Positions 1-23,400 of a stretch of DNA of 64,000 bases are shown piece after piece. The notes beneath the pieces are model-generated. The model was not told the DNA's origin. It searched no databases and saw only the letters and a list, made by a program, of their open reading frames with translations. Location of the stretch: positions 682,001 to 746,000 of the forward strand of contig NW_026782019.1 of the NCBI RefSeq assembly GCF_031769215.1, read 5' to 3'. Position numbers and translations under genes: made by a program. Position 1 is the stretch's first letter. Each line of letters begins with the position of its first letter. The DNA is from Ylistrum balloti. Taxonomy: Eukaryota.

Positions 1-2290
1 GACATATCTCCCATTGGAAATGAATCATTAGGTGTGGCAACACGGCTTGTGTTGGAATGTTCGGCAGTTTGACCGCTCCAGTTTACGGAGCTTGCTACTG
101 GTTGAGTCTGTTGAGGGTTGTATGATTGATTTGGATAGCTAGATGCAGGAGCTGCCATTCCTTCTTGTCCATATCCACCACCTGAAAAATATTAACTTTT
201 CACACTAGCCAAAAATAGTCATCCAAAACATAACAATATTATTTTGAGACATTCCTCACAATCTATGGGTTAAAGGAACCCAATTCACTGTGAACAGTTT
301 TATATACGATACTGCATGGACAACATCAAATTAAGAAAAAAGTGTTTCAAAGAATGTCACAGGTACCAAACATCAGGCCAGATTAAGCAGGTGTGCAGTA
401 TTAATCTTTAGGTCTTACTAACAAGATTGCTCGAATTAGGACGTTGGCATCCTCGATATTCCTGGGGTTACAATAACCACTACTGCCTGCACCCCTGAAC
501 CATGTCATGGCAAAACTGAAGACACAAGTGAAGAAATTTAATTGGTTCCAGGGGAGAAAAACTGACCAGTCGCAGGCTGATACGCTCCTTTTGAAGATTA
601 CAAAGGAAAAATGACCATCTTCAAAACCATTACAATACACCGTTATGCGTCCTTAAGATTCTTGATTCATTGATGTACATTAAACGATCAAACTAGTCTT
701 TTTGTCATGTCCACAAGGAGAATCAAGGATGGGAGATTGGATCATTGAAATTTAGTAGGAAACCATACAGTCTGGCAACACTGGTCCGATTTGGTGATAG
801 AACACTGACCTGTTTTGGAGAAACTGACAAATGTATATACTGTTCTTATATAACTAATGTATCTTACTGAGACGGGATTCATCACAACAGCAAACTAAAC
901 AGTCAGAGCTATAATTAGATGTCACCATGCCAACTGATTAAATTCCACACAGATCAGGTATCTGATGTTTGTTACACTGCTACATAATCTGTTCGACTCA
1001 CGTTTAGTAAAGGTAGTTGTCTATGGAATGTCCTGGCCATATGAATTTTGACTTCAAGCTAGTTATAACATTACATTAAGAGAGTATCACGTTAACTTTC
1101 TGTTTCTTTTAGATACCAAAACTTTACAATTTGCCCACTGATATGACTGAGACAACTGAATCCAGATGATAATAAGTTACTAGAGATCACTAGGCTCTTT
1201 GTCTCTTGTTAATAATATGAACATATTTCCATAAAGAAAAGAGAAAATGTACGTTCAGCAACATAAGTATATTTTTATCACACAATGTAATTAATTTTTA
1301 ATCAGATGATGAAACCATTGAACTAATTATATTATACAGGTTGTAAAGACTTCTTTCCCGAACAGAGAAATAAGCATGTAAGGGACTGACTTAGAAAAAT
1401 AAGAAATTTAGATCAGACAGGAAATAGAAATAGTAATTAGAGTGGCATCAGTTTAGAGAGATCATTATGTGGTCTCCAGGTTTAATTTAGTAATGATAGA
1501 AAGCTAAGGGCTTGTAGTGATTTGTCTAATAGAATTCATTTCTTGGTTGTATAAAGGTGTGCACACATGAGTTGTTATAGAAACCTTACTTTTGGATATC
1601 TGACCTAAACTAGTTTTTGTTGGTACTGTTATATATATATTTATAACAAGAAGATGGACAAAATTTCACAATCCTTCCAATGATGATTTATCTTCTTTAA
1701 ATTGTCTTGTGACTCGGAGCATCTACCAATTATGTCGAGAGACTTTTCCAATAGTTAACTACCAATTACAAGTATATACATATAGTTATAACCACTGTAA
1801 TTTGTGAACATGATGGGTTCAAGTTCTATTCACATGTAAAACTTCACTTGAATTGCTGAGTTCAACAATCACTAACATTATTTTATTATTTTGGTGAGAA
1901 TTGTATCCTAGCTTGCATCCCCCTCCTTTACTCCCACCCTCCCCTCCAAAACACAAAAAAAGAAGAAGGAAAAAAACAACTGAATCATGTGTTTATGAGT
2001 TACTGAGTTTGAAAAGACATGTCCATTTCACGAATGTTTAATAATTTTGTTAATCTGTCAGGTTTATGATCAGATTTCTGAAATTGCCAAATGTCAAGGT
2101 TAAAATGAATGCCCTGTGAAATGTATAGACAGGAAGCATCACACACAGCGCATCACAAGGAAAGCTACATTCAGTATATATGATATGTATGATCACAACA
2201 CATACCATATGTATAACCCCCTTGTTTGTTGTCTTGGTGGCCAGTTGCCATGTTATAGGATGGAGGAGGTGCTGAAGGATAGCTTGTCAT
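1..2290 (-). CDS. 5' part of a gene with a Pro/Gly/Tyr-rich N-terminus, possibly protein lifeguard / TMBIM family; continues beyond the window start
   Basis: Coding exon 2290-2206 (ATG, phase-1 GT donor) joins an exon starting at 181 (TTTTCAG acceptor) in frame: MTSYPSAPPPSYNMATGHQDNKQGGYTYGGGYGQEGMAAPASSYPNQSYNPQQTQPVASSVNWSGQTAEHSNTSRVATPNDSFPMGDM. PSAPPPSY and DSF resemble the N-terminus of TMBIM1/lifeguard from memory, but the diagnostic TM region is outside the window, so the product is tentative. Confidence 0.55.
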
Positions 2291-5242: not shown

Positions 5243-7733
5243 ATGGACGCTTTCTTGATTGTGACAAATGTTCTTATCATTCAACTTTCCTTGTCTATAA
5301 GAGTCTTGGGTAAGTAACTTTTCTTTTATGATCGAAAAATCAAAATATTCGCATTCAATTTTAATGGATGTAAACGATTTTATGAAGAACCTGACATGTT
5401 AAGTAGCTATAGCGGTCTCGATCGTAGTATATTGTAAGGTATAGATATACAAACGATAGAGACATAGTGTCAACTATAACTTGTCTATTTTGTAAAGGAA
5501 TGTAGTCCCTGGTTATATTATGTATTTAATCAAAATAAAAATTCCCCTGAAACATGTCGAAAGCATATCATCCACGTATACATGTATATATATATATACA
5601 ATAAGTTTACTACAAATCACAGCCATAATACTGAGTTAATAGTACAAACACATAAACTCTGGTTGACAAAAGTGAATGAATAGATATTGATATCACAGAA
5701 ATAAGACATTGTTGCGATAGAATAAGCGTTTAACATGGAAACGCAAGACCTATTTCAATCATAAGGACTGTATGGACATAACTCAAATAAAAAGAGGTAG
5801 CCTTCAAAGAGAGACCCTTAAAAGTGCGAGCTCCTCTCTGACAATCATTGCGTCATCGTCATCTGTATCGTGAATGCTGAATCAATGCATGTCTACTCGG
5901 TGGAACAAATCACTATTTCTTACGATGTAACATAATTATACTTACATGGTAAAAAAAACAGTCACGAACCATTCCATACGTACATTGCGTGACTTTATTT
6001 ACATATGTTTTACCCTGAACATAGTAAAAGAGTTAAAATAACTTATCTAATAATAAACTATTGATGTTCACCAACTACTGGCACTTAAATTATATATCCG
6101 TTGTAAAGAAATTACAAAGTCATCACTACCAACGGGAGCGTAAGAAATAACGCCCAATTAAAAAAGGAGAAAAAACATCTGTTTTATACGCCCATGAATG
6201 CCAACTGAAAGCAGTTCATTTATGCTAACCATGTTTACAGCTTAGTGGATGATAAGGTCTAAGTAATGAACGTTATATAATGTACGTAAACACATAAGAG
6301 AAAGTGCTGAGTATTAGACGTGGAGAACAATCCTTTAAGTTACTCTTTATTTACTCATATTTACTAAACGAAAACTATTTCATACACCGTTATTCTACAC
6401 CCTAGTCCAAAAATAGACGTGCTATATATTGAGAATAAATTATATAAATGCTCATTTAGTTGCCGGATTAGATAAAGACAAAACATAAGTTTAAATGCAC
6501 ATATTTAGTGTGCATTGTATGATAGGACGATGTTTGACGCGATGGAATTTCACCGCTCGCGACGCTTTAATGAGGTGCCTGTGAGCGTTGACGACATGTT
6601 TACAGTCTACAATGGGATGAATGCCAGCTAGCTTGTTGATATTTGCCTACCTCATTATGTCTTTAGAGAAGATGGTACCAAGTCTTTAAATTGCATACGC
6701 ATATATTCCTTGAGTCGTATCCAAGAGAGAATTTCAAACAGAATAAACGGAATCATGGGTCAAACATTCAAACAAATTCTTCGAAAGACGTATAAATTCC
6801 TAGAATAAACCAAATTACTTACGCGTTTATCTTACCCAAACGAATGAAAATCTCTTAACAAGTTTTGTAACAGAATGATTATGGTTAGTAATTGTTTGGA
6901 TAATGTAATTTGCTGGAATGCATGACTCTCTCTTCCAAGGGGAGTAGATGGTTATATTATTTTGTAAAAAAGTGCACTTGTAAAGGCTTTGTAAACAGAG
7001 GTGTATCTGTTTGAGATATGTAAGTGTCTTCATATAGGAATAATACGTATACCATTAAGACCTATATGTTATATCCGTCGCTATTTATAGACAAACAATT
7101 GAGAACGTAAGTGCTTTACCTTTTCTTTATCATTAATGTCTGTATTCAAAGATTCTAACACAACTGCAATATTTATATTTAAATAAAGATTTTGCTGTGT
7201 TTGTTGAAAGTATTTTTGAAATTTCACGATGTTAAGTTTATATAAATAGGTGTTATTTTATCGCAGTTATAAATGAAAAACGAATTATGTTTAGATACTT
7301 TTGAGCTGTTTTTTTTTCAAAGAAAGCCTTTCCATTATGAAAGTTTTCAGAAACATACTTCGGGTTGCTTTTACTTCAACATTTATGTCTGTAAATAGAG
7401 TTATAAAAACACATAGAATAACATACGTTTGGTTTCAACACAATTAAAAGCTATTTGCCATTAAGAGCTGTTATCATGCCAGGGTCGACTAGGAAAATTT
7501 ACAAGCTGGTGGAGGAGGCAAGGACGTGGTCGGAGGCCAGGGACTTCTGCAAGGCACAAGATGGGGACCTCGGTGTAGTCACCGACTTCTACTCAAGTCC
7601 GGGGCGATACCTTGCGCACGCTCTTGAGTCCACCCCTGACCTCAAGGCCTGGGTTGCAGGAAAAGGACATGATGATGGATGGGATTGGTACGATAAGCAA
7701 CGAAAGCAAGGTAAATTTTTCTTTTTTTTTTTT

Positions 7734-7768
<35 letters not shown>

Positions 7769-10700
7769 CTGTACACCAAAAGTGACGCACTTGCTTCCGT
7801 ATCGCGTGCATTCAGAGAAAATTTTGTGAGTTAGAGATTCAAAGTACAAGTATTACTGATAATTGTATTTCATTATAGTCCATATTCATTGGTAATTTGG
7901 ATACATCTATGTCATTGTCAGATCCACGTTCTGTCCGACAAATGCATTGCAATCGGAATGTTATCAAAACCAAATTAAATCATTAATGTAACCCAATGAT
8001 GTCGGAAGTCAAATAGGTTGTTTAAAACGTATCTAAACTATAGCTTAATAGTATTAAACAGGAATCAAACATACAACGAGGATATACAATATAAATCAGC
8101 AGAAAATGTCAGGTAATTCTTTTGTTATCAGATTCAGCAAAACAAGAGTTCCAGATAGTTACATGTGATACAGAATAGCTCTGTATCGCACTTTCTGAGA
8201 GATGGTATAAATGTTGATAGACCTTTCCTGAATTTCAGCTGGATCGGTCACTCCAATGTCACAGCTTATCGCATACAGAGGCTGCGTTAAGCCCGAATTC
8301 ATTATGGGTGGAGTGCGAATGAAGAATAATAATGCTATGGATTGCTTTAAAAAATGTGAATGGAAAGGTGCTATTGCCCTTAAGGTAAGTATAAACTTAC
8401 AAACAACACAACATGTAAGATTGGTGTCAAAGGTCATAGCAAATCATATACAAGCTATTCAGAAAGTTGTGAATATCCTTTTTTGATATATCTCGACCTG
8501 ACTTAGGAGTGAAATGATACTCGGTTGCATTTAACATGTGTTATACCTTCCTTAGAGTTGGTATTGTATTTGTGAATGGCGTCTGCGAAATATCACGGTG
8601 ACCGAAACTGACTACTGTGACATCACGTGTCCTGGACGAGAGGGCGAAAGGTGCGGGGGCATCCATGGCGTCTCCCTGTACCAAATGAGTAAGTTTTGTT
8701 GGAATATTTGTGTTTTATCTGTTTCTAGAATAAATACATTTTGTTGTAACATCCGTGGTGTGTTTCATATGAATGTTCATGAAGTGAAATTTTTGTGAGG
8801 ATAACCTTTTGTGGAGATAAAATATCCCAACACCATGTTAATACCTCCAACCAGGTGGATGAGGGTTGTGGATGCATGTGCAAACTATGAAATATTTCTG
8901 CACAATCTAGTGGATATATATAAAACAATGATTTTAGATTTAGTAAATTTGTTAGACTGTCTATAGGTGCTTGTGGGTGTCAAAATTGAGCTAGTTTAAG
9001 AACTGTATGAGCCATATGAGATGCATTGGGTTTGTAAGGAGAGCTGCGAGGTATGTTTTTCTACACCTGCTGGTACTCAAGTTGAATTCACAGTTCTAGT
9101 CTTGGAATGGACTATAAAGTAAATATTGCGAGAATTTGTGGAGTAGTGCAGTTACAAGAAAAAAGACTGAAATCTTGTAGAGTTTGCACTCACGTTATCA
9201 CTGGTACAGTAGGGTATTTTTATATTCTGTGTTTCTATGACAGATTAAAGCAATTTAAACGTTGTAACTACATTTCCTATCAGAATTGATCTTAAATGTT
9301 GTTTGTGGAATCGCAGATTCACGTGCCGTGCTGTGGGGGCAGGACGAACCCTTAGCAGCCAGGGGCTGTGTTTACGTGAACAGACCTTATGAGGACGAAC
9401 CTTGGAGCTGGCACGCCTCGCACTGTCACATGATCAGGCGTTTTCTTTGTAAATACGGTAAGGAGGCCAATTATGTAAAAAAAAAAAAAAAAAAAAATCT
9501 ATTGTGTTCGTTTATTTCATCAATGTTGAATATTTCTCATATACATATATATGTGAATAATTTGAATTTTAAACATGGTAGGTTGCCCTCTATTATCGCA
9601 ATCTAGTGCCGAGGTAAATTCTCTACATAAGGAAGCAACTCCTTCTAGCCATGAAGTTGGCCCTATCAATTTAAATGTCCCAATGCTGCAGTTTTTATGA
9701 TGCTTATGTGAATGATTCAATGGCGTATAGGACAGGTTGAACTTAAATTTAATGTTGCCCTCTCATTTTTTTGCGGATCAATCAAAGTATTGGAACCGAA
9801 ATTAGCTAAACGAGTTAAGAATTTATACATCCTCTGCATTACACGTATTATTGAATGTTGATGTTAATCTATGTCCTTTGACCCAGTTAACATACATTAC
9901 GTCTAGATGTGCCATACTCCATAGCCTGTGCTCCAATCTCCTATTCCTCTAGTCTTCAGTCAGTATCAAACGAACTCCATTGCTATACCCTCTCTGTATA
10001 CGTTGCCCTTCATCCATTGCTTTTATAGCCTTCATGTTTCATATTTAACTGTAAAACTTCATTCCACTAATCGTCATGTCCAGATTATTATAAACATAAG
10101 AGTTTAGCAGTATTCGTATTTTAACGCCTTTAGAACTGAACGTATTATACTACAATACAATTCCGCCTACTGCAGTTTCTGCATGCTGATTATGTATCAA
10201 ATTTTGAGGACTCATCATTGCGCTTATTAACCCTAACAAGATGAAAATGCGCTAAAATTTGATTACGCTAAATTAAGTTCGTTTACAATAACGACATTCC
10301 ATTCCACGGTTCCTCAGGTTCGATTAACCATACACCATTACTCTACTCCTCATGTCTAGATTCACCGTACTCTAGTCCTTTTGTCTAGATTAATTCTTCT
10401 CTATTTCGTACTCCATTCCCGTAATCCTCACGCCCATATTAAGTGTACTCAATTCCTCTTTCCCTATCACCAGATTAAGCGTACTCCATAGGTCAATTTC
10501 TCATGTCCAGATTAAGAGTACTCCATAGGTCTGTTTTTCCTGTCCAGATTAAGCGTACTCCATACGACTATTTCTCATGTCCATATTAAGCGTACTCCAT
10601 TTCGCCTTTCCTCAAGTCCACTTTGACAATACACTTTGCCTTTATGTCTGGTAACCAGATAATGCGTACTCTTTTATTCCTTATATCTCATTGTCCAGAT

Positions 10701-13700
10701 TGACAATGCTCCAGAATCCTCTTTCCCTAATGTCCAGATTGGCTGTGCTCCAATCCTCTATTTCTAATGTCCAGATTGACTTTGCTCCAATCCTCTATTC
10801 CTAATGTCCAGATTGGCTGTGCTCCAATCCTCTATTCCTAACATCCAGATTGACTTTGCTCCAATCCTCTTCCCCTAATGTCCAGATTGGATGTGCTCTA
10901 ATCCTCTATTTCTAATGTCCAGATTGACTTTGCTCCAATCCTCTATTCCTAATGTCCAGATTGGCTGTGCTCCAATCCTCTATTCCTAACATCCAGATTG
11001 ACTGTGCTCCAATCCTCTATTCCTAACATCCAGATTGACTGTGCTCCAATCCTCTATTCCTAACATCCAGTTTGACTGTGCTCCAATCATCTATTCCTAG
11101 TGTCCAGATTGGTTATGTTCCAATCCTCTATTCTTAATGCCTAGATTGGCAATGCCCCATCCTCTATTCCTAATGTCCAGATGGACTGTACTCCAATCCT
11201 CTATTCCTAATGTCCAGATGGACTGTACTCCAATCCTCTATTCCAAATGTCCAGATTGGCTGTGTTCCAATCCTCTGTCCCTAATGTCCAGATGAACTGT
11301 GCCCCAATCCTCTATTCCTAATGCCTAGATTGACAATGCTCCAGTTCTCTATTCCTAATGTCCAGATTGACAATGCTCCAATCCTCTATTCCTAATGTCC
11401 AGATTGACTGTGTTCCAATCCTCTATTCCTAATGTCCAGATTGACTGTGCTCCAATCCTCTGTCGCTAATGTCCAGATGGACTGTACTCCAATCCTCTAT
11501 TCCAAATGTCCAGATTGGCTGTGTTCCAATCCTCTGTCCCTAATGTCCAGATGAACTGTGCCCCAATCCTCTATTCCTAATGCCTAGATTGACAATGCTC
11601 CAGTTCTCTATTCCTAACATCCAGATTGACTGTTCTCCAGTCCTCTATTCCTAACGTCCAGATTGACTGCGTTCCAATCCTCTATTCCAAATGTCCAGAT
11701 TGACTGTGCTCCAATCCTCTATTCCTAATGTCCAGATTGACTATGCTCCAATCCTCTGTCGCTAATGTCCAGATGGACTGTACTCCAATCCTCTATTCCT
11801 AATGTCCAGATTGACTGTGCCCCAATCCTTTGTTCCTAATGTCCAGATTGACTGTGCTCCAATCCTCTATTCCTAACATCCAGATTGACTGTGCTCCAAT
11901 CCTCTATTCCTAATGTCCAGATTGACTGTGCTCCAATCCTCTGTCGCTAATGTCCAGATGGACTGTACTCCAATCCTCTATTCCTAATGTCCAGATGGAC
12001 TGTACTCCAATCCTCTATTCCAAATGTCCAGATTGACTGTGCTCCAAATTCTCTAATGTCCAGATGGACTGTACTCCAATCCTCTATTCCTAATGTCCAG
12101 ATTGACTGTGCTCCAATCCTCTATTCCTAAATCCAGATTGACTGTGCTCCAATCCTCTATTCCTAATGTCCAGATGGACTGTACTCCAATCCTGTGTTCC
12201 AATCCAGATGGACCTCCAATCCTCTATTCCTAATGTCCAGATTGACTGTACTCCAATCCTCTATTCCTAAAGTCCAGATGGACTGTACTCCAATCCTCTA
12301 TTCCAAATGTCCAGATTGACTGCGTTCCAATCCTCTATTCCTAATGTCCAGATTGACTGTGCTCCAATCCTCTTTTCCTAATGTCCAGATGGACTGTACT
12401 CCAACCCTCTATTCCAAATGTCCAGATGGACTATGCTTCAATCCTCTATTCCTAATGTCCAGATTGACTGTGCTCCAATCCTCTATTCCTAATGTCCAGA
12501 TTGACTGTGCTCCAATCCTCTATTCCTAATGTCCAGACTGTGCTCCAATCCTCTATTCCTAATGTCCTGTGTACTCCAATCCTCTATTCCTAATGTCCAG
12601 ATTGACAATGCTCCAATCCTCTATTCCTAATGCCCAGATGGACTATGCTCCAATCCTCTATTCCTAATGTCCAGATTGACAATGCCCCAATCCTCTATTC
12701 CTAACATCCAGATTGACTGTGCTCCAATCCTCTATTCCTAATGTCCAGATGGACTGTACTCCAATCCTCTTTTCCTAATGTCCAGATGGACTGTACTCCA
12801 ATCCTCTATTCCAAATGTCCAGATTGACTGCGTTCCAATCCTCTGTCGCTAATGTCCAGATGGACTGTACTCCAATCCTCTATTCCTAATGTCCAGATGG
12901 ACTGTACTCCAATCCTCTATTCCAAATGTCCAGATTGACTGTGCTCCAATCCTCTATTCCTAATGTCCAGATTAGCTGTGTTCCAATAATGTCCAGATGG
13001 ACTGTACTCCAATCCTCTATTCCTAATGTCCAGATTGACTGTGCTCCAATCCTCTATTCCTAATGTCCAGATTAGCTGTGTTCCAATCCCCCTGTCCCTA
13101 ATGTCCAGATTGACTGTGCCCCAATCCTCTATTCCTAATGTCCAGATTGACAATGCTCCAATCCTCTATTCCTAATGTCCAGATTGACTGTGTTCCAATC
13201 CTCTATTCCTAATGTCCAGATTGACTGTGTTCCAATCCTCTGTCGCTAATGTCCAGATGGACTGCACTCCAATCCTCTATTCCTAATGTCCAGATGGACT
13301 GTACTCCAATCCTCTATTCCAAATGTCCAGATTGACTGCGTTCCAATCCTCTATTCCTAATGTCCAGATTGACTGTGCTCCAATCCTCTATTCCTAACAT
13401 CCAGATTGACTGTGCTCCAATCCTCTATTCCTAATGTCCAGATTAGCTGTGTTCCAATCCCCCTGTCCCTAATGTCCAGATGAACTGTGCCCCAATCCTC
13501 TATTCCTAATGTCCAGATTGACAATGCTCCAATCCTCTATTCCTAATGTCCAGATCTATTCCTAATGTCCAGATGGACTGTACTCCAATCCTCTATTCCA
13601 AATGTCCAGATTGACTGTGCTCCAATCCTCTATTCCTAATGTCCAGATTGACTGTGCTCCAATCCTCTGTCGCTAATGTCCAGATGGACTGTACTCCAAT

Positions 13701-16700
13701 CCTCTATTCCTAATGTCCAGATGGACTGTACTCCAATCCTCTATTCCAAATGTCCAGATTGACTGTGCTCCAATCCTCTATTCCTAATGTCCAGATTGAC
13801 TGTGCTCCAATCCTCTGTCGCTAATGTCCAGATGGACTGCACTCCAATCCTCTATTCCTAATGTCCAGATGGACTGTACTCCAATCCTCTATTCCAAATG
13901 TCCAGATTGACTGCCTTCCAATCCTCTATTCCTAATGTCCAGATTGACTGTGCTCCAATTCTCTGTCGCTAATGTCCAGATGGACTGTACTCCAATCCTC
14001 TATTCCTAATGTCCAGATGGACTGTACTCCAATCCTCTATTCCAAATGTCCAGATTGACTGTGCTCCAATCCTCTATTCCTAACATCCAGATTGACTGTG
14101 CTCCAATCCTCTATTCCTAATGTCCAGATTGACTGTGCTCCAATCCTCTGTCGCTAATGTCCAGATGGACTGCACTCCAATCCTCTATTCCTAATGTCCA
14201 GATGGACTGTACTCCAATCCTCTATTCCAAATGTCCAGATTGACTGCGTTCCAATCCTCTATTCCTAATGTCCAGATTGACTGTGCTCCAATTCTCTGTC
14301 GCTAATGTCCAGATGGACTGTACTCCAATCCTCTATTCCTAATGTCCAGATGGACTGTACTCCAATCCTCTATTCCAAATGTCCAGATTGACTGTGCTCC
14401 AATCCTCTATTCCTAACATCCAGATTGACTTTGCTCCAATCCTCTATTCCTAACATCCAGATTGACAATGCCCCAATCCTCTATTCCTAATGTCCAGATT
14501 GACAGTGCTCCAATCCTCTATTCCTAATGCATAGATTCATCAAAATGGTGTTTTACATTCTCGATGGCCTTGCTTATAATTGTTCATATAAATATTTTTT
14601 CATTGTTGTACTCTGTCAGACGACCACCATATCTGCGGTGTCTACCCATCTTGTGTTCGGCCCTCCACCAAACCGGCGACGTGGGAGGACGCTGTAGATG
14701 AATGTCAGCTTAACAATGGAACCATTGCAACAGTTGACGTCACACACATGCATGAGAGTGATGAAATCATCACAGTTCCACCTGGTCAGTTCTGGATCGG
14801 TCTTAGTAAGCAAGAAAGCTGGAAATGGACAAATGGTAAATACAAAAATGTACTGTGGTTTTAATTCGATGAACATGTCTAAATGCTTTTCTTTCTTTCA
14901 TCATCTTTTATTCCGATTTGTCTATTTCATATGTGGTGTAATATTCGGCGTCATTGCTAAAAATAAAAGTCTTATATGTCCCATCTTAACTTGATCAGAT
15001 GTATGCACAATTTATGATTTCCTTGCCATACCTTAAGTTGGAGGCGATGAGGGGCTGTTTGTCTTCATGACAATTGTATTACGTCACATTAACAAGTGAC
15101 GTCATGTCAATAATTCAATAACGTCACGTCAACAATGCTAAATACTGAGACAACAATAACATTATATACAATGAGGAAAAGCTTAAAAGTTAAGAAAAAA
15201 GTAAGCTTTCACCTTGTCGGTGAGATAGGGGGGATATCAACATCAGGAAGCAAATTTTCACCTTAGGCATATATCTCCCGCGGATTAAAAACCCTCCGTC
15301 TATTATCACGTAATAGAAGGAAATATTATATCAATCATAATGCTGAACCTATGGTTGATCAATACAATTATTAAACAATGTTTTATGAAGATGAGGTCCA
15401 GTGCTGACACTTTTGGTTAATTGATTGATACCAAGAATAATTCCTCGTTATGATATTGTGTCATCGGAACTATGAAAACTTTATTCCACATTGTATTCCA
15501 GGGGTACCTATTCCGGCTACATACTTCCATGCCGACCGGTATGATAAATGCACGAGCGACACGTGCGTCGTGTTACAAAAGAAAGGCGACCTCAAACTGG
15601 CCGGAGATTTGTGTGATAATAGGAGACCTTTCATATGTCAATTCTGTAGGTGTTCTCTACGATTACGTTGCCTTCTATATCATGACATATAACAGTTTAT
15701 GTAAAAGTAGCACTTTAGTAGAAGGGATTAATATTATTAATGATTAAATGACGAATAACTTAAGGATGTGTTCTAGCGGATTTTCCCGTATTTTCTCTTT
15801 CCCAAAAAATATTGTCCTTGATATTTTTCTCTGGAAATATTTATCAGATTTGTGAAGTAACTCGGCAGGAATATAAAATATCAATCGTTGTACGTAAACT
15901 ATACAGATATAATCCACGTACTGATTGCACCATTCATCAATATATTCGCCCAAACTGTAAGCATGTGGAGAGCAATGGTAGATCAATCGCTCTACACGCT
16001 GTACTCTAAATAAATTTTAGTGTCGGTAGGTAGCAATACCCTAGAATCAATTTAATCGCTCAAAAGAAATAAGTAAGCCACAGTTCGACGCAATAGATCA
16101 CCCAGTTGATACCCCAATATGAACATAAGTATGAGGTAAATGTAGTTTATATGTTACATAGAAACACGCGGGTAAAATCAATATCCCTAATGTATTTCCG
16201 TATTGTTCCCTTCTCCTTAACGTGTCGTCATTGTCACTGTAAATTTCCATTTGAATGAAAAAAGAAATTTCAATGTGTTGAATTGCATCAACGCCACGCC
16301 CTACTAAAAAGGACAAATTATTGAAGACGTTTGGAAAACGATTTCGTTTGCATCGGTTCAAATGTTACGTATTAAAACAATAGCATTCAAATTGAGATGA
16401 TTACTTTTGGTTTTTAATAACGATTTTCGGCATGATGCTGTTGTTTTTGTTTACGTTAATGTTTGATGATAAATGGACCCACATTCGTATATACATATCC
16501 ACATTTCTTCGATAAATCACTTATCTTTATTGATTTCATAGATGTGGAGCACCATTCACCGGTCAAGAACCCACCCTTTGATCAGAAAGATGACCCCTCT
16601 GTAGGGGTTAAAGGTCGGAAAAACAATACCTCAACTGGGGACCCGGATGTTGAATCCAGAGAGGAGATGTACAAAACCGGTAAATATTGTGATCTGTAAC

Positions 16701-18913
16701 AGACTTTCTGTGTGAACAAGATTATGATAAATTTTATAGAGTGCCTCGATACTATGAGTGATATTTTCATTGGCTACCGTAATTAATACAGTGTTTATGG
16801 TGGTTTCTGTTTGAAAAAGATTATCTCGTTGAAACGAGGGATAAGTTTTATCCGAAAAAAGTATACGGTAAACGTAAGTTAAAATTGCGCTGAATGCTGT
16901 TAACTGATTACTTGCTGATAGATAATACCATTGGTGATATTATCCGTTTTGTTTCAGTGATGTACCTGGCGATCGGAGTGGCCTCTGGGATGGCTTTCGT
17001 CTTCTCTATCTGTATCATAGCCTATGTGGCTAGACGGTAAATCTTTCCTTCTATATCAACATTATTAACATTTAAAACTAAACATGTTTTGTTTTGTTTT
17101 TGAGGCAAAAAAAAAAATCTGATTTTCATGTGTAATTTGATTTGTTTTTTGAGAAAATCGAACCATTTAGTAAACAAATTATTATTTCTAATAGTCTATC
17201 AGCAGTCTCTATAATCTGCAGTCTCGAAGATTGTACAAAAGACACAAAATGTATTGCACCATTGAATACAAATTTGGATAAGATAAAGTAGAGGCAAACA
17301 ATGAAGTAAACTTCATCATACAGATGTTAAGTACTGGTTTTTGTCTAAGTATATAATAATTTTTGATATCTTGTAATACGCGGATGTCCCACAGGGTTAA
17401 GCTTGAATACGTACTGATATACTAGTTGTAAGACAGTACAGTTTAGTGTATAAAACTTGAAAGAAAGTTATGTTTTATAAATATGTTCGATATAGTTAGT
17501 CACATTTGGTCCGATTTGGTCACATTTTACATGTCACAGTTTACATGCAATTGCTTCGATATTCAAGGGCCTGATCCCATTACCACGATTTTCGTGCTGT
17601 AAGTCATCAACTGACTACCAAACTAGTAATACAAGAGTTCTAAAGATGCAGTGTGATGAACATTATGGGGAAGTTTTGTAGTCGCCATAGTGATCTCATT
17701 GAGAAATATTCTATTCCTTTGTATGAAATGAGACTTTGCCTGATGATTTCTTTCTTGTATACCTTGTTCTCATTTGAGAACGTGACATTACTTCCTTGAA
17801 TTGACCAAGGTTTACATGGCGGTTGTCGTCGATGCAGCAGAAGACTCATTCAGATCACCGGGTTGTCCCTCTTGTCCTTTTTCTGGAGTTTCCTTTTAAA
17901 CATTTCTTTTGTTCATACTTCGCCCTATTTTTATTGAATTTGAGTTTGGATTATGATTATGTTAACATGTTGGTATTTGCTTGATGTTTCTTGACGGAAT
18001 TACTTTACACGTACATTTTTCATTTGCTTTTCGGCTTCAAACATCGTTGTCATTGAATCTGATGCATCTTTGTTTATCAATTTATATACTAACATACTTT
18101 GGAGATATCATTCAATGTGTCTTATTTGGCGCGATGTAGAACATATACAATTTTAATAAGTAATATAAAACACCAATATGCACGACTGTATTACATACAT
18201 ATGTAATCAATGCATAAGTAATTCTGTTACTTTCTTGATTATCAATTTACAGTTGCAGGCAGCGTTCCAAATGGAAAGCAAGGGGAGGATTCCGACATCG
18301 CAGAGTCAACAACAATGGAGGATTTGTAAACGAATCAATGCACGGGTCCTCATCAGCTCCGCACAAACAGGAAACGGATGTAATTCTTTACGACATTCCT
18401 TGTGATTCTCAAGCGTCGTCGGAGTCGCCTTTTCGGCGGACGCAGCGAGTCCTTCGCGAAGAATCGTTACGGGAAACACCATATACACACACTCGAAGAG
18501 GATCTGACGGGTACCGCAGTCTGTCCTGGAAACGAGTCCCTAGCGGCTCTAGAAAGGAAAAGGATACCAAGCCCAGGGAGCGACAATTCAGTCGCCCTGA
18601 GATTCGATCGGTGTACACGGGACCAGAGACGGAGAGGTCGTTCATGGATGCCAGTTACATGATCCATCAGGTACAGGCACAATGTCACAACGATCGTCAG
18701 GTTCCACGCAGCGAGTATGTAGATATTGAAACCACCGCCAGACAGCGCACTCGCAGATTCTCCGACTTGGAGAACGATGATGCTATTCACTTGGCAGACA
18801 CGTATAGTCAACCAGTTCGAAATAGGAGACCAAGCGACAACGGAGCGTTATCATCAATGGACACCAGTGATTTGTATGCTTGTGTACATAAAGTCATGTC
18901 AAATCGAGACTGA
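5243..18913 (+). CDS. Type I transmembrane receptor: signal peptide - C-type lectin domain with inserted WSC domain - second C-type lectin domain - stalk - TM - tyrosine-motif cytoplasmic tail (about 650 aa)
   Basis: Ten exons with GT-AG ends and consistent phases: 5243-5309 (signal peptide MDAFLIVTNVLIIQLSLSIRVLG), 7483-7710 (CTLD1 N-half: TWSEARDFC, WVAG, WDWYD), 8239-8384 and 8556-8688 (WSC, 8 Cys: YRGC...DCFKKC...YCIC...CDITCPG...RCGG...SLY), 9317-9457 (CTLD1 C-half: WGQDEP, GCVYV, WHASHC, FLC), 14620-14835 and 15502-15645 (CTLD2: TWEDAVDEC, FWIGL, CVVL, LC, FIC), 16542-16679 (stalk), 16958-17036 (TM), 18253-18913 (tail, TGA). Total 1953 nt, an intact frame. Confidence 0.88.
7716..7766 (+). 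repeat. Poly-T followed by (GA)n microsatellite
   Basis: T run directly after the exon 2 donor, then about 15 GA units at 7737-7766. Confidence 0.95.
10300..14530 (+). repeat. 37-bp minisatellite array in intron 5 of the lectin receptor gene
   Basis: Consensus AATGTCCAGATTGACTGTGCTCCAATCCTCTATTCCT. Well-conserved core at about 10692-14530 (roughly 100 copies); more degenerate variant copies at about 10300-10690, with relics to about 9900. Confidence 0.97.
17690..17870 (-). repeat. Dispersed repeat fragment, homologous to 29000-29215 on the opposite strand
   Basis: Reverse complement GCCATGTAAACCTTGGTCAATTCAAGGAAGTAATGTCACGTTCTCAAATGAGAACAAGG...TATTTCTCAATGAG aligns with GCAATGTAAATCTTTGTTAATTCTAGTAACTAAAGTCACGATCTCAAATGAGAACAAGG...TATTTCTCAATGAG at about 29060-29205. 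Confidence 0.7.
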
Positions 18914-19107
18914 TTTTATTCATATTAAAACCACCGCCAGGCAAAGTACCCACAGATTCTCTGGAGGACGATGATGATATCGACTCGGTACACACGTATA
19001 GTCAACCAGTTCTAAACAGGAGGCCAAGCGACAACAGAGCTGTGGCATTAATGGACACCAATAATCTGTGTGCTTGTGTACATAAAGTCATGTCAAATCG
19101 AGACTGA
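18912..19107 (+). pseudogene. Degenerate tandem duplicate of the last about 200 nt of the lectin receptor CDS
   Basis: Aligns with 18713-18913 (AAACCACCGCCAG...ACACGTATAGTCAACCAGTT...TGCTTGTGTACATAAAGTCATGTCAAATCGAGACTGA); offset 199 nt, with a 5-nt deletion, out of frame with the CDS. Confidence 0.9.
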
Positions 19108-20390: not shown

Positions 20391-20429
20391 TGTGATCATA
20401 ATATATTGACAGGGTGATAGGATACACTG

Positions 20430-23400
20430 TTATATACCTTTCGCCAAAAGTTCTAGCTCACTGACAACGAAGTCCAGGTCTGATTCTTGGAGAGCTGGAT
20501 TCGAAATAGCCACACGGAAAAAGTTTGGCAAGTCAAGTAAAGGTTGATAAGCTAGCATCATCGAACCTTTCTCCATCATCGCAGCCTTCAGTCTAGGAGC
20601 AACCTTTAACATTTTAAAAATTTACTTTCATTAGTGCCGAACAAGGTCTGCCTAATTTGAAGCTATTGTATAAACGATATTATCTATACGTCATAGTAAC
20701 TTATTGTCTGATTTTTAGACTTGTAGACTGATATATTAAATTTGCTTGCTATAATTATTTTTTTATTATTATTGCTTCATTTGTTATTTCATTTTACTTC
20801 ATTTTCGCCATCTTTTATTCATTTCGCATTTCGCAGCCACACCTTGCTGTACTTACACCTATTCTGTCAAAACTGTATTAAAATAAACAAATATTTATGG
20901 TTTACATTTTGATTCGTATTTGTGACTTTACTAGGCGTCACTTTTAGTGTTTAGTTGTATGACTTTAAAATTAATTAATACCTTTCCTAGTTCAGTCTTG
21001 TATTTGTCAGGATCTTCAACACAGGCTACGCTATCAGGTATGAACCAGAAGCAAACATTTGGCGCCTGGAACTGTGCGAATATATACAAAATTAAATTAT
21101 TCATCATCATATTTCGGAATTCAAGAAAACAAATGTTTTATATTTTTCACGTCTTTCTCATTCTGTAATTTGTCAATGTAATAGCGGAAATGATATTCAG
21201 TATAGACATTTTAGTGTTCCTTAGTTTGAACGCATTTTGATACGAATGCATAGTTCAAATACAAAGGCGATCGTGCATATAGCTTTTGCGTTCAGGAGAA
21301 AATAACATTGAAAAATATTTTAATGTTACCTCGTTATTGACAAGTTTGAAATTTGGTCTTTCATGAATTTTGTTCATCAAATACTTGGCAAGCCTGAAGT
21401 TTTTGTCAATTTGACTCTCGAAACCCTTGTCACCCTGAAAGATATAAACAAATATTTACTGAGAGATGGTTTGTTGTTATTTAGACTAAAAGGATGTATA
21501 CATGGATAAAAAATGTGATAGAATAAATATATTAAAGAACAGCTACCAAATTCGAAATTATTTAAATCTAATGGATACCTTTGCTCTCCACATCAGCCAC
21601 AGTTTAAATACGTCGTTATGACGTCCACATTGTATTGTTTTATCGCCAGTATCATACGTGACGTCATAATGTTTGTCGTTCTGGTATAAGTAGGAAGCGC
21701 CTAGTGCATTCACATCATGGAGAATACCCTTAAAACAAAGAGAGAGAGAGAAAAAAGCAAAGTAACGTCAAATTATATTTAATCAACATTGTTATTTTCG
21801 CTATATGCTGCAGAGATTTTTCTTAATATAAGTAGTATGTTCCTATACGCTGAGAACAATGCTAATTGCCGAAGGAACAATTTGGTCTTCACATATCTAG
21901 TGATCTTTAAGGTATTGAGAATGTTAAATATGAACAAGCAAAGACATGGGTTCAAGAACAAGATGTGTTCATTAATAGGAGTTATCGTTCATTCCTATTC
22001 CACTTCGAAAACAAGTCGATCTCGAAAAAGGAGCCTTGCACGAAAATAAGTCGAGTCTTTATGGTTTTCCACTTGAGATGTCATATTCCTTAGATTATCT
22101 TGGTGAGTTAAGTAGATCATAATATCGCATTATGTAACAATTTCGAAAGCAATTGAATAAATGCATTATGTGATAATCGACAAATTGGAAGAAGTGAAAA
22201 CATATGTTAACTGATAACTTTGTCTCCGTCACAAGACTGTTAACTGCCAAAGATTTGTCCTCATCCTCCTACACAATGTTGGACAAACGTTACATAACGT
22301 TCATACCTTCTGACGGAGAAGGATCGCCGAACACTGTAGCGGTACTCCCATCATCTTGTGTGGATTCCATGTCATAGAGTTAGCACTGGTAAGGAGACAA
22401 TTTGTGAAATACTCCTGTAAGTCGTTAGTGAATAATTTTCTATCCCGACTCATCAGATTTAAGCATGAAAGTAGATTATCAATATTGTTCATTAACATCA
22501 TATCAATTAGGATTTTGTACAACAATCCTTATCTTCATCTTATCAATAATACAGTAATAGTAATAACAGTAAAACGTACTTGTATGGTTGCCTGTCCTAT
22601 AAGACAGCACATTATAATTATAAAACGCTGAAATGATGGATTTGCCATACTGATGTATTAAGGATACAAACGAATATATCAACGTTGAAATCTACTACAA
22701 TATGAAAAGGATAAGCAGCACACGTTCATACATAAACAGTTCAATGTACATTTATATAACATGGAGAACAAATGTGAGGACTATTCATTTTCTTCATAAC
22801 ACTCTCATTGTACTTATATCTGAAGGTGCTGGTCAAATAAAACATGTTCGAGGTTACTGCATTAAATCGCCTGTCTCACTGACAAATGAACTGATTCATA
22901 TATCTTAGATTGCCAAGCAAAAAGTAAATAATACAGCAATGAGTCGTTACTGTTACATTTAGCTAGAAATATTTGCAAACAAATATCATTGTCTCTCATC
23001 AACACAGATCAGTACATCAAAATCACTGAGATAGCATGTTAAATACAATAAAAACCAACTTACCTAGATACGCCTGCTAACAAGTGTCTGTGTCTTTCAG
23101 ACAGTAATACAGATCCTCCCCAAGCACCCTATGAATGTATGACAGACAAAGAGAAAGAAAAAAACCCATTAAAATTCGTGCATTTGATAGTTATATCTAA
23201 CGTGATTCCATTTCAAACAAAACAAATTTGCATGCACTTATGTTCTTTGTATTGTTATTTCTCAGGAAACATTTCTGTAATATGTGGTTTGTATTCAGCG
23301 TGAAGTCACCAAATTAATTAAACAAACCAAAAGTGTATAATGCCTTACATCAACATGAAGCCATATATTGTATTTCTTGCAAATAGCGGATATGTCGTTG

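What the first reader, a model, noticed from the sequence alone, without database searches (positions are those of the whole stretch)
7483..9457. WSC domain inserted into the long-loop region of a C-type lectin domain, with an exon-shuffling signature
Seen: exon 7483-7710 encodes the first half of a CTLD (Cys1, WIGL-equivalent WVAG, WDWYD); exon 9317-9457 encodes the second half (W..DEP, Cys2, WHA, Cys3, FLC). Between them lie two exons encoding a complete 8-Cys WSC domain. The module is flanked by phase-1 introns, totals 279 nt (a multiple of 3), and sits where the uninterrupted CTLD2 of the same gene also has a phase-1 intron (WKWTNG|VPIP). Established: the long loop carries the Ca2+/sugar site of CTLDs, and WSC is a putative glycan-binding module. 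Inference: a 1-1 module was shuffled into a pre-existing CTLD intron, giving a nested domain-in-domain; skipping both exons would restore a contiguous CTLD. I do not know of a characterised receptor with this nesting, but I cannot search for one.
Basis: partly seen in the sequence, partly recalled or inferred. Interest (0 to 1): 0.8.

Follow-up and report, generated by a model that had tools for sequence, protein, structure and literature searches.

The report
WSC domain nested inside scallop lectin domain
A scallop cell-surface receptor gene carries a complete WSC sugar- or protein-binding module spliced into a surface loop of a C-type lectin-like domain. This domain-within-a-domain layout is conserved in four scallop genera, escapes routine annotation, and I found no description of it in the literature.

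Summary
The window comes from the scallop Ylistrum balloti. The four exons belong to gene LOC132546285, and its RefSeq protein (650 aa) is reproduced exactly by a 10-exon model with canonical splice sites.

- **One lectin domain, split.** Exons 7483-7710 and 9317-9457 are the two halves of one C-type lectin-like domain (CTLD). Joined, they match a profile of 68 uninterrupted CTLDs end to end (72.7 bits). With the insert present, the match splits at profile position 72/74.
- **Fold.** AlphaFold packs the halves into one CTLD (Z about 15 against solved CTLDs).
- **The insert.** The 93 residues between them carry the eight cysteines and CGG motif of a WSC domain, spaced as in yeast Wsc1. Pfam scores it 0.5 bit below threshold, and its fold could not be modelled.
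- **Conservation.** Single-copy, syntenic orthologues in Pecten, Mizuhopecten and Argopecten keep the same module exon lengths and splice sites. dN/dS is 0.04-0.13.
- **Annotation.** Routine Pfam sees only the second CTLD, so the nesting is hidden.
- **Origin.** The phase 1-1 signature is real but weak evidence, because nearly all ectodomain introns are phase 1. The intron in the second CTLD lies 3-5 residues away.
- **Gaps.** No RNA data could be obtained, and function is inferred.

This is a new variant of known kinds.

The parts
5243..5309 (+). Exon 1: start codon and hydrophobic signal-peptide-like N-terminus (residues 1-22 plus the first base of Gly23); followed by a phase-1 intron
   Evidence: Found by ATG, hydrophobicity and phase-1 donor scan. 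100% match to P0151 residues 1-23. Part of the exact model. Conserved with Pecten DNA.
7483..7710 (+). Exon 2: N-terminal half of CTLD1 (residues 24-98: beta1, alpha1 with Cys45, alpha2, WVAG, WDWYD); phase 1 on both sides
   Evidence: Pfam Lectin_C profile positions 2-62. Local CTLD profile positions 2-72, 43-46 bits. pLDDT 78-97. dN/dS 0.05.
8239..8384 (+). Exon 3: 12-residue linker plus the first half of the WSC module (Cys114, Cys134, Cys138); enters in phase 1 and leaves in phase 0
   Evidence: Open frame and splice sites. Exon-only conservation. dN/dS 0.20. Part of the Pfam WSC hit on the whole insert.
8556..8688 (+). Exon 4: second half of the WSC module (Cys151, Cys153, Cys168, Cys172, Cys180-Gly-Gly, an invariant NIT glycosylation sequon); enters in phase 0 and leaves in phase 1
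   Evidence: Pfam WSC profile positions 49-82, E 2e-4 on this exon alone. Aligns to the yeast Wsc1 domain 7pz2. dN/dS 0.06.
9317..9457 (+). Exon 5: C-terminal half of CTLD1 (residues 193-238: LWG.DEP, Cys209, WHA, Cys228, FLC236); phase 1 on both sides
   Evidence: Pfam Lectin_C profile positions 80-106. Local profile positions 74-115. pLDDT 69-94. dN/dS 0.02.
14620..14835 (+). Exon 6: N-terminal half of the uninterrupted CTLD2 (ends inside the Gly311 codon of WKWTNG)
   Evidence: Pfam Lectin_C E 7.5e-6. Exact model.
15502..15645 (+). Exon 7: C-terminal half of CTLD2
   Evidence: Pfam Lectin_C profile positions 77-107. CTLD2 as a whole scores 47 bits. Exact model.
16542..16679 (+). Exon 8: membrane-proximal stalk
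   Evidence: Exact model. Conserved with Pecten DNA. No Pfam family.
16958..17036 (+). Exon 9: transmembrane helix followed by a basic stop-transfer stretch
   Evidence: Exact model. The hydrophobic stretch is nearly invariant in four species.
18253..18913 (+). Exon 10: cytoplasmic tail of about 220 residues with eight invariant tyrosines, and the stop codon
   Evidence: Exact model. Alignment A1. No Pfam family.

Best explanation
This is exons 2-5 of a single-copy scallop gene (Ylistrum balloti LOC132546285). The gene encodes a type I membrane protein with this order of parts: signal peptide, CTLD1 with a WSC domain nested in its long-loop region, CTLD2, short stalk, transmembrane helix, and a tyrosine-rich tail of about 220 residues.

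Shown here: the two CTLD1 half-exons together make one normal-sized CTLD. The 93-residue, two-exon module between them is a WSC-type eight-cysteine domain with short linkers. It lies between the W-x-W strand and the (E)P loop. The arrangement, the module's exon lengths and its splice sites are conserved under strong purifying selection in four pectinid genera.

Inferred: the WSC cassette entered a phase-1 intron of a two-exon CTLD in or before the ancestor of these scallops.

Inferred mechanism: CTLD1 has lost the canonical Ca2+/sugar ligands (EPL for EPN/QPD, WHA for WND, RGC for E-x-C). It therefore serves mainly as a rigid pedestal. It presents the WSC domain on its former ligand-binding face, and WSC supplies or completes the recognition surface for a glycan or a protein. 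Engagement is then passed through the single membrane helix to conserved tyrosine motifs in the tail, one ITIM-like S-x-Y-x-x-I and three Y-x-x-P.
For: Gene model:
- The spliced window exons equal RefSeq P0151 exactly.
- In Mizuhopecten, the genome project's own protein record and RefSeq carry the identical protein sequence.
- Exon lengths and phases are identical in Pecten and Argopecten. In Mizuhopecten the module exons have the same lengths and canonical splice sites.
- DNA similarity to the Pecten locus is limited to exons. The downstream decarboxylase gene is syntenic in all four species.
- Pairwise dN/dS is 0.04-0.13 for both CTLD1 and WSC, with dS about 0.9-1.8.

One CTLD:
- The A+D construct aligns end to end with 112 uninterrupted CTLDs.
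- MAFFT opens one gap over module residues about 74-171.
- A profile of 68 uninterrupted CTLDs gives 72.7 bits over positions 2-115 for A+D. For the full module it gives split hits at positions 2-72 and 74-115. WSC alone scores -3 bits.
- Cysteine parity fits: 1 + 3 Cys in the halves align to the invariant or nearly invariant (90% or more) Cys columns of the CTLD alignment, and 8 Cys lie in the insert.
- AlphaFold gives pLDDT 78-97 for the halves.
- Foldseek returns CTLDs only. VIA-align gives Z 14-16 and rmsd 2.2-2.6 A over 109-119 residues, spanning model residues 1-217 against whole solved CTLDs.

WSC:
- Pfam PF01822 gives E 2-4e-6 in all four orthologues.
- The best PDB sequence match is the yeast Wsc1 domain 7pz2.
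- Cys spacing is 20/4/13/2/15/4/8, against 22/4/16/2/15/4/8 in Wsc1, and the CGG motif is present.

Degenerate Ca2+ site: seen in the alignment with canonical EPN/QPD and WND sequences.
Against: - No transcript evidence was obtained. No RNA run holds the locus, and the one listed run laid nothing. Splicing therefore rests on annotation and conservation.
- The WSC part could not be modelled (pLDDT 33-51 in context, 35 alone). The geometry of WSC relative to CTLD1 is therefore unknown.
- The WSC Pfam score is just under the gathering cut-off (27.3 against 27.8).
- I built the alignment given to AlphaFold from CTLDs aligned across the gap, so the fold result is not fully independent of the sequence alignment.
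- No ligand, expression or signalling data exist. The pedestal-and-WSC binding model is inference.
- Intron-position identity with CTLD2 is approximate.
Confidence: 0.75

Rival explanations
1. The architecture is the same but the origin differs. An ancestral serial CTLD-WSC-CTLD ectodomain lost two exons, the C-half exon of the first CTLD and the N-half exon of the second. That left a chimeric CTLD wrapped around WSC. No insertion into an intron took place.
For: Every CTLD half-exon in this gene is itself a symmetrical 1-1 exon (228, 141, 216 and 144 nt), so such deletions would stay in frame. Bivalves are reported to have lineage-specific proteins that combine CTL and WSC domains. The CTLD1 insertion point and the CTLD2 intron are not at exactly the same residue.
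Against: It needs two independent exon losses and a functional chimera of halves from two domains. A+D scores higher against a CTLD profile than the intact CTLD2 does (72.7 against 59 bits). No serial precursor was seen among the relatives found.
Confidence: 0.15
2. The WSC exons are cassette exons. The common protein is the skipped form with a plain CTLD1, and the nested form is a minor or conditional isoform.
For: Skipping is in frame and yields a full-length CTLD. No RNA data could be examined here.
Against: The WSC exons are under purifying selection as strong as the CTLD exons, with all eight Cys invariant. All annotations in four species include them. No skipped isoform was returned by a search that would have admitted one by length and shared words.
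Confidence: 0.07
3. The gene model is an annotation artefact. The WSC exons belong to a separate gene lying inside an intron, or the CTLD1 halves are decayed remnants that do not fold together.
For: Only predicted models exist. Each half alone is below the Pfam threshold.
Against: The WSC exons have no conserved start codon or signal peptide, because the only Met in the linker is Val or Leu in the orthologues. They begin with a split codon at a conserved acceptor. The halves have dN/dS of 0.02-0.05 and keep the four canonical cysteines. The predicted fold is confident.
Confidence: 0.03

Closest known systems
Canonical C-type lectin-like domains, e.g. CTLDs of mannose-receptor-like proteins, collectin CL-11, codakine
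   Same: Same fold by prediction (Z about 15). Same four core cysteines and the same W-rich core motifs. The nearest sequence relatives are single CTLDs of 'macrophage mannose receptor 1-like' proteins at about 25-30% identity.
   Different: Here the chain leaves the domain after the W-x-W strand, builds a whole 8-Cys domain, and returns. None of the 68 comparators has more than a few residues at that point. The EPN/QPD and WND Ca2+/sugar motifs are replaced by EPL and WHA.
WSC domains: yeast Wsc1 sensor domain (PDB 7PZ2), human Kremen1 WSC (5FWS), the fungal beta-glucan lectin SiWSC3
   Same: Eight cysteines with near-identical spacing, the CGG motif, and the Pfam PF01822 match. Like Wsc1 and Kremen, the host protein is a type I membrane protein.
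   Different: In those proteins WSC is a terminal or serial module (Kringle-WSC-CUB in Kremen; PMC9024836). Here it is embedded in a loop of another domain. Sequence similarity is low, and the Pfam score is 0.5 bit under the cut-off.
Polycystin-1, and the bivalve-specific CTL+WSC proteins mentioned by Saco et al. 2023 (PMC10140915)
   Same: The same two domain types occur in one extracellular region (polycystin-1 architecture from my own knowledge; bivalve CTL+WSC combinations).
   Different: Those are described as combinations of separate domains. The text searches of that paper found no mention of nesting. The scallop proteins here carry only PF00059 in precomputed annotation, so a domain survey by standard thresholds would list them as plain CTLD proteins.
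Known nested extracellular domains, e.g. the integrin alpha-I domain in the beta-propeller, or laminin L4 within an LE module (from my own knowledge, not tested here)
   Same: An autonomous module is inserted in a loop of a parent domain, which still folds.
   Different: The parent and guest folds are different. I know of no case, and found none, with a CTLD as the parent.

Membership tests
C-type lectin-like domain (PF00059 / CTLD fold) | Full-length profile match | tested here: met
   A+D gives 72.7 bits over positions 2-115 of a 116-position profile built from 68 uninterrupted CTLDs. The full module gives complementary hits at positions 2-72 and 74-115. Pfam on the 217-residue module of the Pecten orthologue (P0001) gives 33 bits against a cut-off of 22.6, although the C-terminal part of that alignment is misplaced into WSC. 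Each half alone is below the cut-off (18.9 and 14 bits).
C-type lectin-like domain (PF00059 / CTLD fold) | Four core cysteines (C1-C4, C2-C3) | tested here: met
   Cys45, Cys209, Cys228 and Cys236 are invariant in four species. They align to the invariant or nearly invariant (90% or more) Cys columns of A2. The pairing itself was not tested.
C-type lectin-like domain (PF00059 / CTLD fold) | CTLD three-dimensional fold formed by both halves | tested here: met
   AlphaFold pLDDT is 78-97 for the halves. VIA-align gives Z 14-16 and rmsd 2.2-2.6 A over 109-119 residues, spanning residues 1-217. This is a prediction, not an experiment.
Ca2+-dependent carbohydrate-recognition domain (true C-type lectin) | EPN/QPD and WND motifs plus the Glu before Cys2 | tested here: not met
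   The sequence has EPL, WH(A/T) and R/H-G-C in all four species. I therefore do not file it as a canonical sugar-binding CRD.
WSC domain (PF01822) | Pfam gathering score | tested here: inconclusive
   27.3 bits against 27.8 for the isolated insert. E is 2-4e-6 in 4 of 4 orthologues. Within the full proteins the score is 22-24 bits.
WSC domain (PF01822) | Eight conserved cysteines in WSC spacing, and the CGG motif | tested here: met
   Cys114, 134, 138, 151, 153, 168, 172 and 180 have spacing 20/4/13/2/15/4/8. Wsc1 has Cys27, 49, 53, 69, 71, 86, 90 and 98. C180-G-G is present.
WSC domain (PF01822) | PAN/Apple-like fold with a long L5 loop | tested here: inconclusive
   AlphaFold confidence is too low (pLDDT 33-51 in context, 35 alone). 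Only the helix carrying Cys134/138 and the strand carrying Cys151/153 appear where expected.
Exon-shuffled class 1-1 module | Both flanking introns in phase 1 and module length a multiple of 3 | tested here: met
   146 + 133 = 279 nt with phases 1 / 0 / 1. These values are identical in Pecten and Argopecten, and in Mizuhopecten the module exons are collinear with the same lengths. The feature is weakly diagnostic, because all other ectodomain introns are also phase 1.
Exon-shuffled class 1-1 module | The recipient intron exists at the same site in an uninterrupted homologue | tested here: inconclusive
   CTLD2 has a phase-1 intron at profile position 69 against 72/74, which is 3-5 residues away. 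26 CTLDs of a chiton gene and a sea-urchin gene have introns at positions 71.5-75, but in phase 0 or 2.
Exon-shuffled class 1-1 module | An identifiable donor module elsewhere in the genome | not testable with these tools
   Word-based searches with the WSC part found only the four orthologues. No mollusc genome collection is available for tblastn.

The most novel reading that the evidence does not exclude
This is the first natural case of a whole autonomous domain grafted into the long-loop (ligand-binding) region of a C-type lectin-like domain. A dead Ca2+ site has been replaced by a WSC recognition head, giving a composite sensor on a tyrosine-signalling receptor. The innovation is specific to scallops and arose by intronic exon insertion. 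Nested lectin domains of this kind are systematically missed, because each fragment falls below the family thresholds.
Probability: 0.35. Interest if true: 0.65.

Novelty: new variant of a known kind. Interest (0 to 1): 0.5.

Why it matters
CTLDs are among the most studied recognition scaffolds in immunity. Their long-loop region is where specificity is made, and it is known to vary by loop remodelling, loss and domain swapping. A natural, long-conserved graft of a second binding domain into that loop would be a new way of diversifying the scaffold. It would also be a clean example of module insertion inside another module. In addition it gives protein engineers a tolerated insertion point.

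There is a practical lesson as well. With standard thresholds these proteins are annotated as having one Lectin_C domain only. Surveys of lectin repertoires in bivalves and elsewhere may therefore overlook split or nested domains.

Tried and rejected
- **RNA evidence.** Two run searches (the module region and the 672-nt tail exon) returned only one non-RNA run. Laying that run gave no contigs. No junction evidence exists either way.
- **WSC structure.** The insert was folded in context and alone with the four orthologues. Both runs had low confidence, so I made no fold search on it.
- **Deeper WSC alignment.** Word searches with the insert found only the four orthologues or nothing. I tried it as a region of the full protein and as a 97-residue profile. 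The protein atlas gave no usable hit.
- **Pfam's single Lectin_C alignment.** On the Pecten module it ran from residue 12 to 131 and ended at 'WYCICE' inside WSC. I considered this as a rival domain boundary and rejected it. WSC alone scores -3 bits against a CTLD profile, and A+WSC scores no more than A alone. Exon 5 supplies profile positions 74-115.
- **WSC in other relatives.** None of the 149 other best representatives matching exon 2 contains a WSC-like segment. Only one 50%-identity cluster in 1.84 billion representatives matches exon 2 below E 1e-30.
- **A general phase-1 intron at this CTLD site.** It was not found in chiton and sea-urchin multi-CTLD genes.
- **Other.** The Rfam scan of the window found nothing. 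The N run at 43048-43231 was left untouched.


Full report
**What is there.** Reading 7300-9700 shows four open exons with AG/GT borders at 7483-7710, 8239-8384, 8556-8688 and 9317-9457. Spliced, they give one 215-residue open frame. Scanning upstream for an ATG, a hydrophobic stretch and a phase-1 donor gave a single candidate, 5243-5309.

An exhaustive HMMER search of 1.84 billion cluster representatives with exon 2 alone returned one close relative, a 653-residue Pecten maximus protein (XP_033724953.1, 88% identity). All other hits were generic multi-CTLD proteins. A word search with the module of that protein found three more proteins. They come from Ylistrum balloti, Mizuhopecten yessoensis and Argopecten irradians, are 649-657 residues long, and are 84-85% identical over the module.

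The Ylistrum protein (XP_060065978.1, LOC132546285, 'uncharacterized protein') matches the coding exons of the window at 97.8-100% by tblastn, apart from hits that run into flanking intron and the split codons at exon borders. A 10-exon model from the window reproduces all 650 residues exactly.

**Is the gene model trustworthy?** I could get no transcript evidence. Two searches for sequencing runs returned one non-RNA run, and laying it gave nothing. The support is comparative.

- DNA similarity between the window and the Pecten locus is restricted to ten blocks that coincide with the ten exons. It then resumes in the downstream pyridoxal-decarboxylase gene, which is syntenic in all four species.
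- Exon lengths (67 or 64, 228, 146, 133, 141, 216, 144, 138, 79) and intron phases (1, 1, 0, 1, 1, 1, 1, 1, 2) are identical in Ylistrum, Pecten and Argopecten. Mizuhopecten is collinear, with canonical sites at the four module exons and a GC donor further on.
- Synonymous sites are near saturation (dS 0.9-1.8), while dN is 0.07-0.14. That gives dN/dS of 0.04-0.13 for both CTLD1 and the insert in every computable species pair.
- In Mizuhopecten the genome project's protein record and RefSeq carry the same protein sequence.
- The middle exons cannot be a separate intronic gene. They start with a split codon and have no conserved Met or signal peptide.

**One CTLD or two fragments?** Pfam on single exons places exon 2 on Lectin_C profile positions 2-62 and exon 5 on positions 80-106. 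This is the same split as the two exons of CTLD2.

The construct without the insert (A+D, 121 residues) aligns end to end with 112 uninterrupted CTLDs of 110-129 residues among the proteins fetched. MAFFT aligns 68 of them to the module with one clean gap over module residues about 74-171. Only two residues of the comparators fall inside that gap.

A profile built from those 68 CTLDs gives the following scores:

| Construct | Score | Profile positions |
|---|---|---|
| A+D | 72.7 bits | 2-115 of 116 |
| Full module, first hit (residues 3-74) | 43.3 bits | 2-72 |
| Full module, second hit (residues 172-214) | 17.0 bits | 74-115 |
| A+WSC | 44.8 bits | 2-72 |
| Exon 2 half alone | 46.6 bits | 2-71 |
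| WSC alone | -3 bits | none |

This removes the alternative suggested by Pfam's own alignment of the Pecten module, which ended at 'WYCICE' inside WSC.

Cysteine counts agree. There is one Cys in exon 2 and three in exon 5. They align to the invariant or nearly invariant (90% or more) Cys columns of the CTLD alignment.

AlphaFold2 on this alignment gives pLDDT 78-97 for both halves. Foldseek returns only CTLDs. VIA-align gives Z 14-16 and rmsd 2.2-2.6 A over 109-119 aligned residues. The model range is 1-217 against complete solved CTLDs such as CL-11, mannose-receptor CRD4 and codakine. One caveat applies: the input alignment already encoded the split, so this result is supportive rather than independent.

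**What is the insert?** Pfam WSC (PF01822) matches all four orthologous inserts at E 2-4e-6. The score is 27.3 bits, just under the 27.8 cut-off. The best PDB sequence match is 7pz2 (E 0.02-0.04), which is the yeast Wsc1 sensor domain.

The paper on that structure defines WSC domains by three features: eight cysteines (27, 49, 53, 69, 71, 86, 90, 98), a CGG motif, and a PAN/Apple core with strand order beta1-beta5-beta3-beta4-beta2 (PMC9024836). The scallop insert has Cys114, 134, 138, 151, 153, 168, 172 and 180. The spacing is 20/4/13/2/15/4/8, against 22/4/16/2/15/4/8 in Wsc1. It also has C180-G-G, and all of these residues are invariant.

Because beta1 and beta5 are neighbours in that fold, the domain's two ends should lie close together, as a loop insertion needs. 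This last point is inference. I could not confirm the fold, because the insert stayed at pLDDT 33-51 in context and 35 alone. No further WSC homologues could be recruited.

**Where in the CTLD?** The chain leaves after W-D-W-Y-D-K-Q-R-K-Q and returns at S-R-A-V-L-W-G-.-.-E-P. That is between the W-x-W strand and the loop that normally carries EPN/QPD, which places it in the long-loop region (established CTLD nomenclature, from my own knowledge).

CTLD1 has EPL instead of EPN/QPD, WH(A/T) instead of WND, and R/H-G-C where a Glu usually precedes Cys2. This holds in all four species. The canonical Ca2+/sugar site is therefore gone.

**Exon-shuffling claim.** The facts are right. The cassette is 279 nt, is flanked by phase-1 introns, and is split by a phase-0 intron. 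Skipping it is in frame. Two qualifications apply.

- Every other ectodomain intron is also phase 1, so any viable insertion had to be 1-1.
- In profile coordinates the CTLD2 intron is at position 69 and the CTLD1 break is at 72/74. That is 3-5 residues apart in a loop with indels.

In 26 CTLDs of a chiton gene and a sea-urchin mannose-receptor-like gene, introns occur at many positions and in all phases. Some lie at positions 71.5-75, but in phase 0 or 2. The shared layout of two exons and a phase-1 intron in CTLD1 and CTLD2 is thus specific to this gene. That fits a pre-existing intron but does not prove it.

An origin by exon loss from a serial CTLD-WSC-CTLD ancestor is not excluded, since all the half-exons are symmetrical.

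**How it probably works (inferred).** This is a type I receptor. Its membrane-distal head is a CTLD scaffold with a dead Ca2+ site, carrying a WSC domain on its former binding face. WSC domains bind beta-glucans in fungal lectins and proteins in Kremen. I therefore expect the WSC, perhaps with neighbouring CTLD loops, to be the recognition surface, and I expect binding not to depend on the canonical Ca2+ site.

The tail has eight invariant tyrosines, including S-E-Y-(V/M)-D-I (ITIM-like) and three Y-x-x-P motifs. This agrees with the scan's separate note on the tail.

**Comparison and novelty.** The gene is annotated but uncharacterised. Precomputed Pfam lists only PF00059. On the full proteins only CTLD2 passes threshold, while the CTLD1 halves and WSC are all sub-threshold. 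Routine annotation therefore hides the architecture.

Saco et al. 2023 mention bivalve-specific CTL+WSC combinations (PMC10140915). Term searches of that paper found no mention of nesting or insertion. A 2025 review of bivalve C-type lectins does not mention WSC or insertions at all. Searches for domain insertion in CTLDs, for WSC in scallops, and for the gene identifiers found nothing relevant.

I rate this a new variant of known kinds. It has two familiar domains and a familiar evolutionary mechanism, in an arrangement I could not find described.

**Limits.** There is no RNA evidence, no experimental structure, no confident WSC model and no ligand. The taxonomic range is known only from annotated proteins of four pectinids.

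Noticed in passing
window 10692-14529 (intron 5, between CTLD1 and CTLD2): A 37-bp minisatellite of about 104 copies (higher-order 148-bp unit) with strong C-over-G skew on the + strand. It makes this intron 5162 bp in Ylistrum, against 704 bp in Pecten and 1025 bp in Argopecten.
   Followed up: partly
window 18909-19104: Just around and after the stop codon of the tail exon lies a diverged partial copy of the last 60 or so codons of the tail (55-78% amino-acid identity to the tail). The Ylistrum protein ends at ...SNRD, about 7-9 residues earlier than its orthologues.
   Followed up: no
window about 20429-23148, minus strand: This is the neighbouring gene for a pyridoxal-dependent decarboxylase (PF00282). 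Its exons are conserved with Pecten, and it lies in the same tail-to-tail position in all four scallop genomes.
   Followed up: partly
window 14620-15645 (CTLD2, protein residues 244-356): CTLD2 has seven invariant cysteines, an odd number (244, 250, 267, 327, 332, 348, 356). One may be free or may form an intermolecular bridge.
   Followed up: no
window 54000-56000: A GC-rich block (54% against about 35% elsewhere) holds overlapping long ORFs on the + strand (up to 456 aa). They have no Pfam family.
   Followed up: partly
L002 about 11763 (Mizuhopecten orthologue, exon 8 donor): The stalk exon appears to use a GC rather than a GT donor in Mizuhopecten. The other three species have GT.
   Followed up: no
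window 7713-7766: A poly-T run followed by a (GA)n microsatellite starts a few bases after the donor of exon 2.
   Followed up: no
window 3-191, minus strand: An open frame rich in Gly, Gln, Pro and Ser runs off the window start. It is probably an exon of another gene.
   Followed up: no
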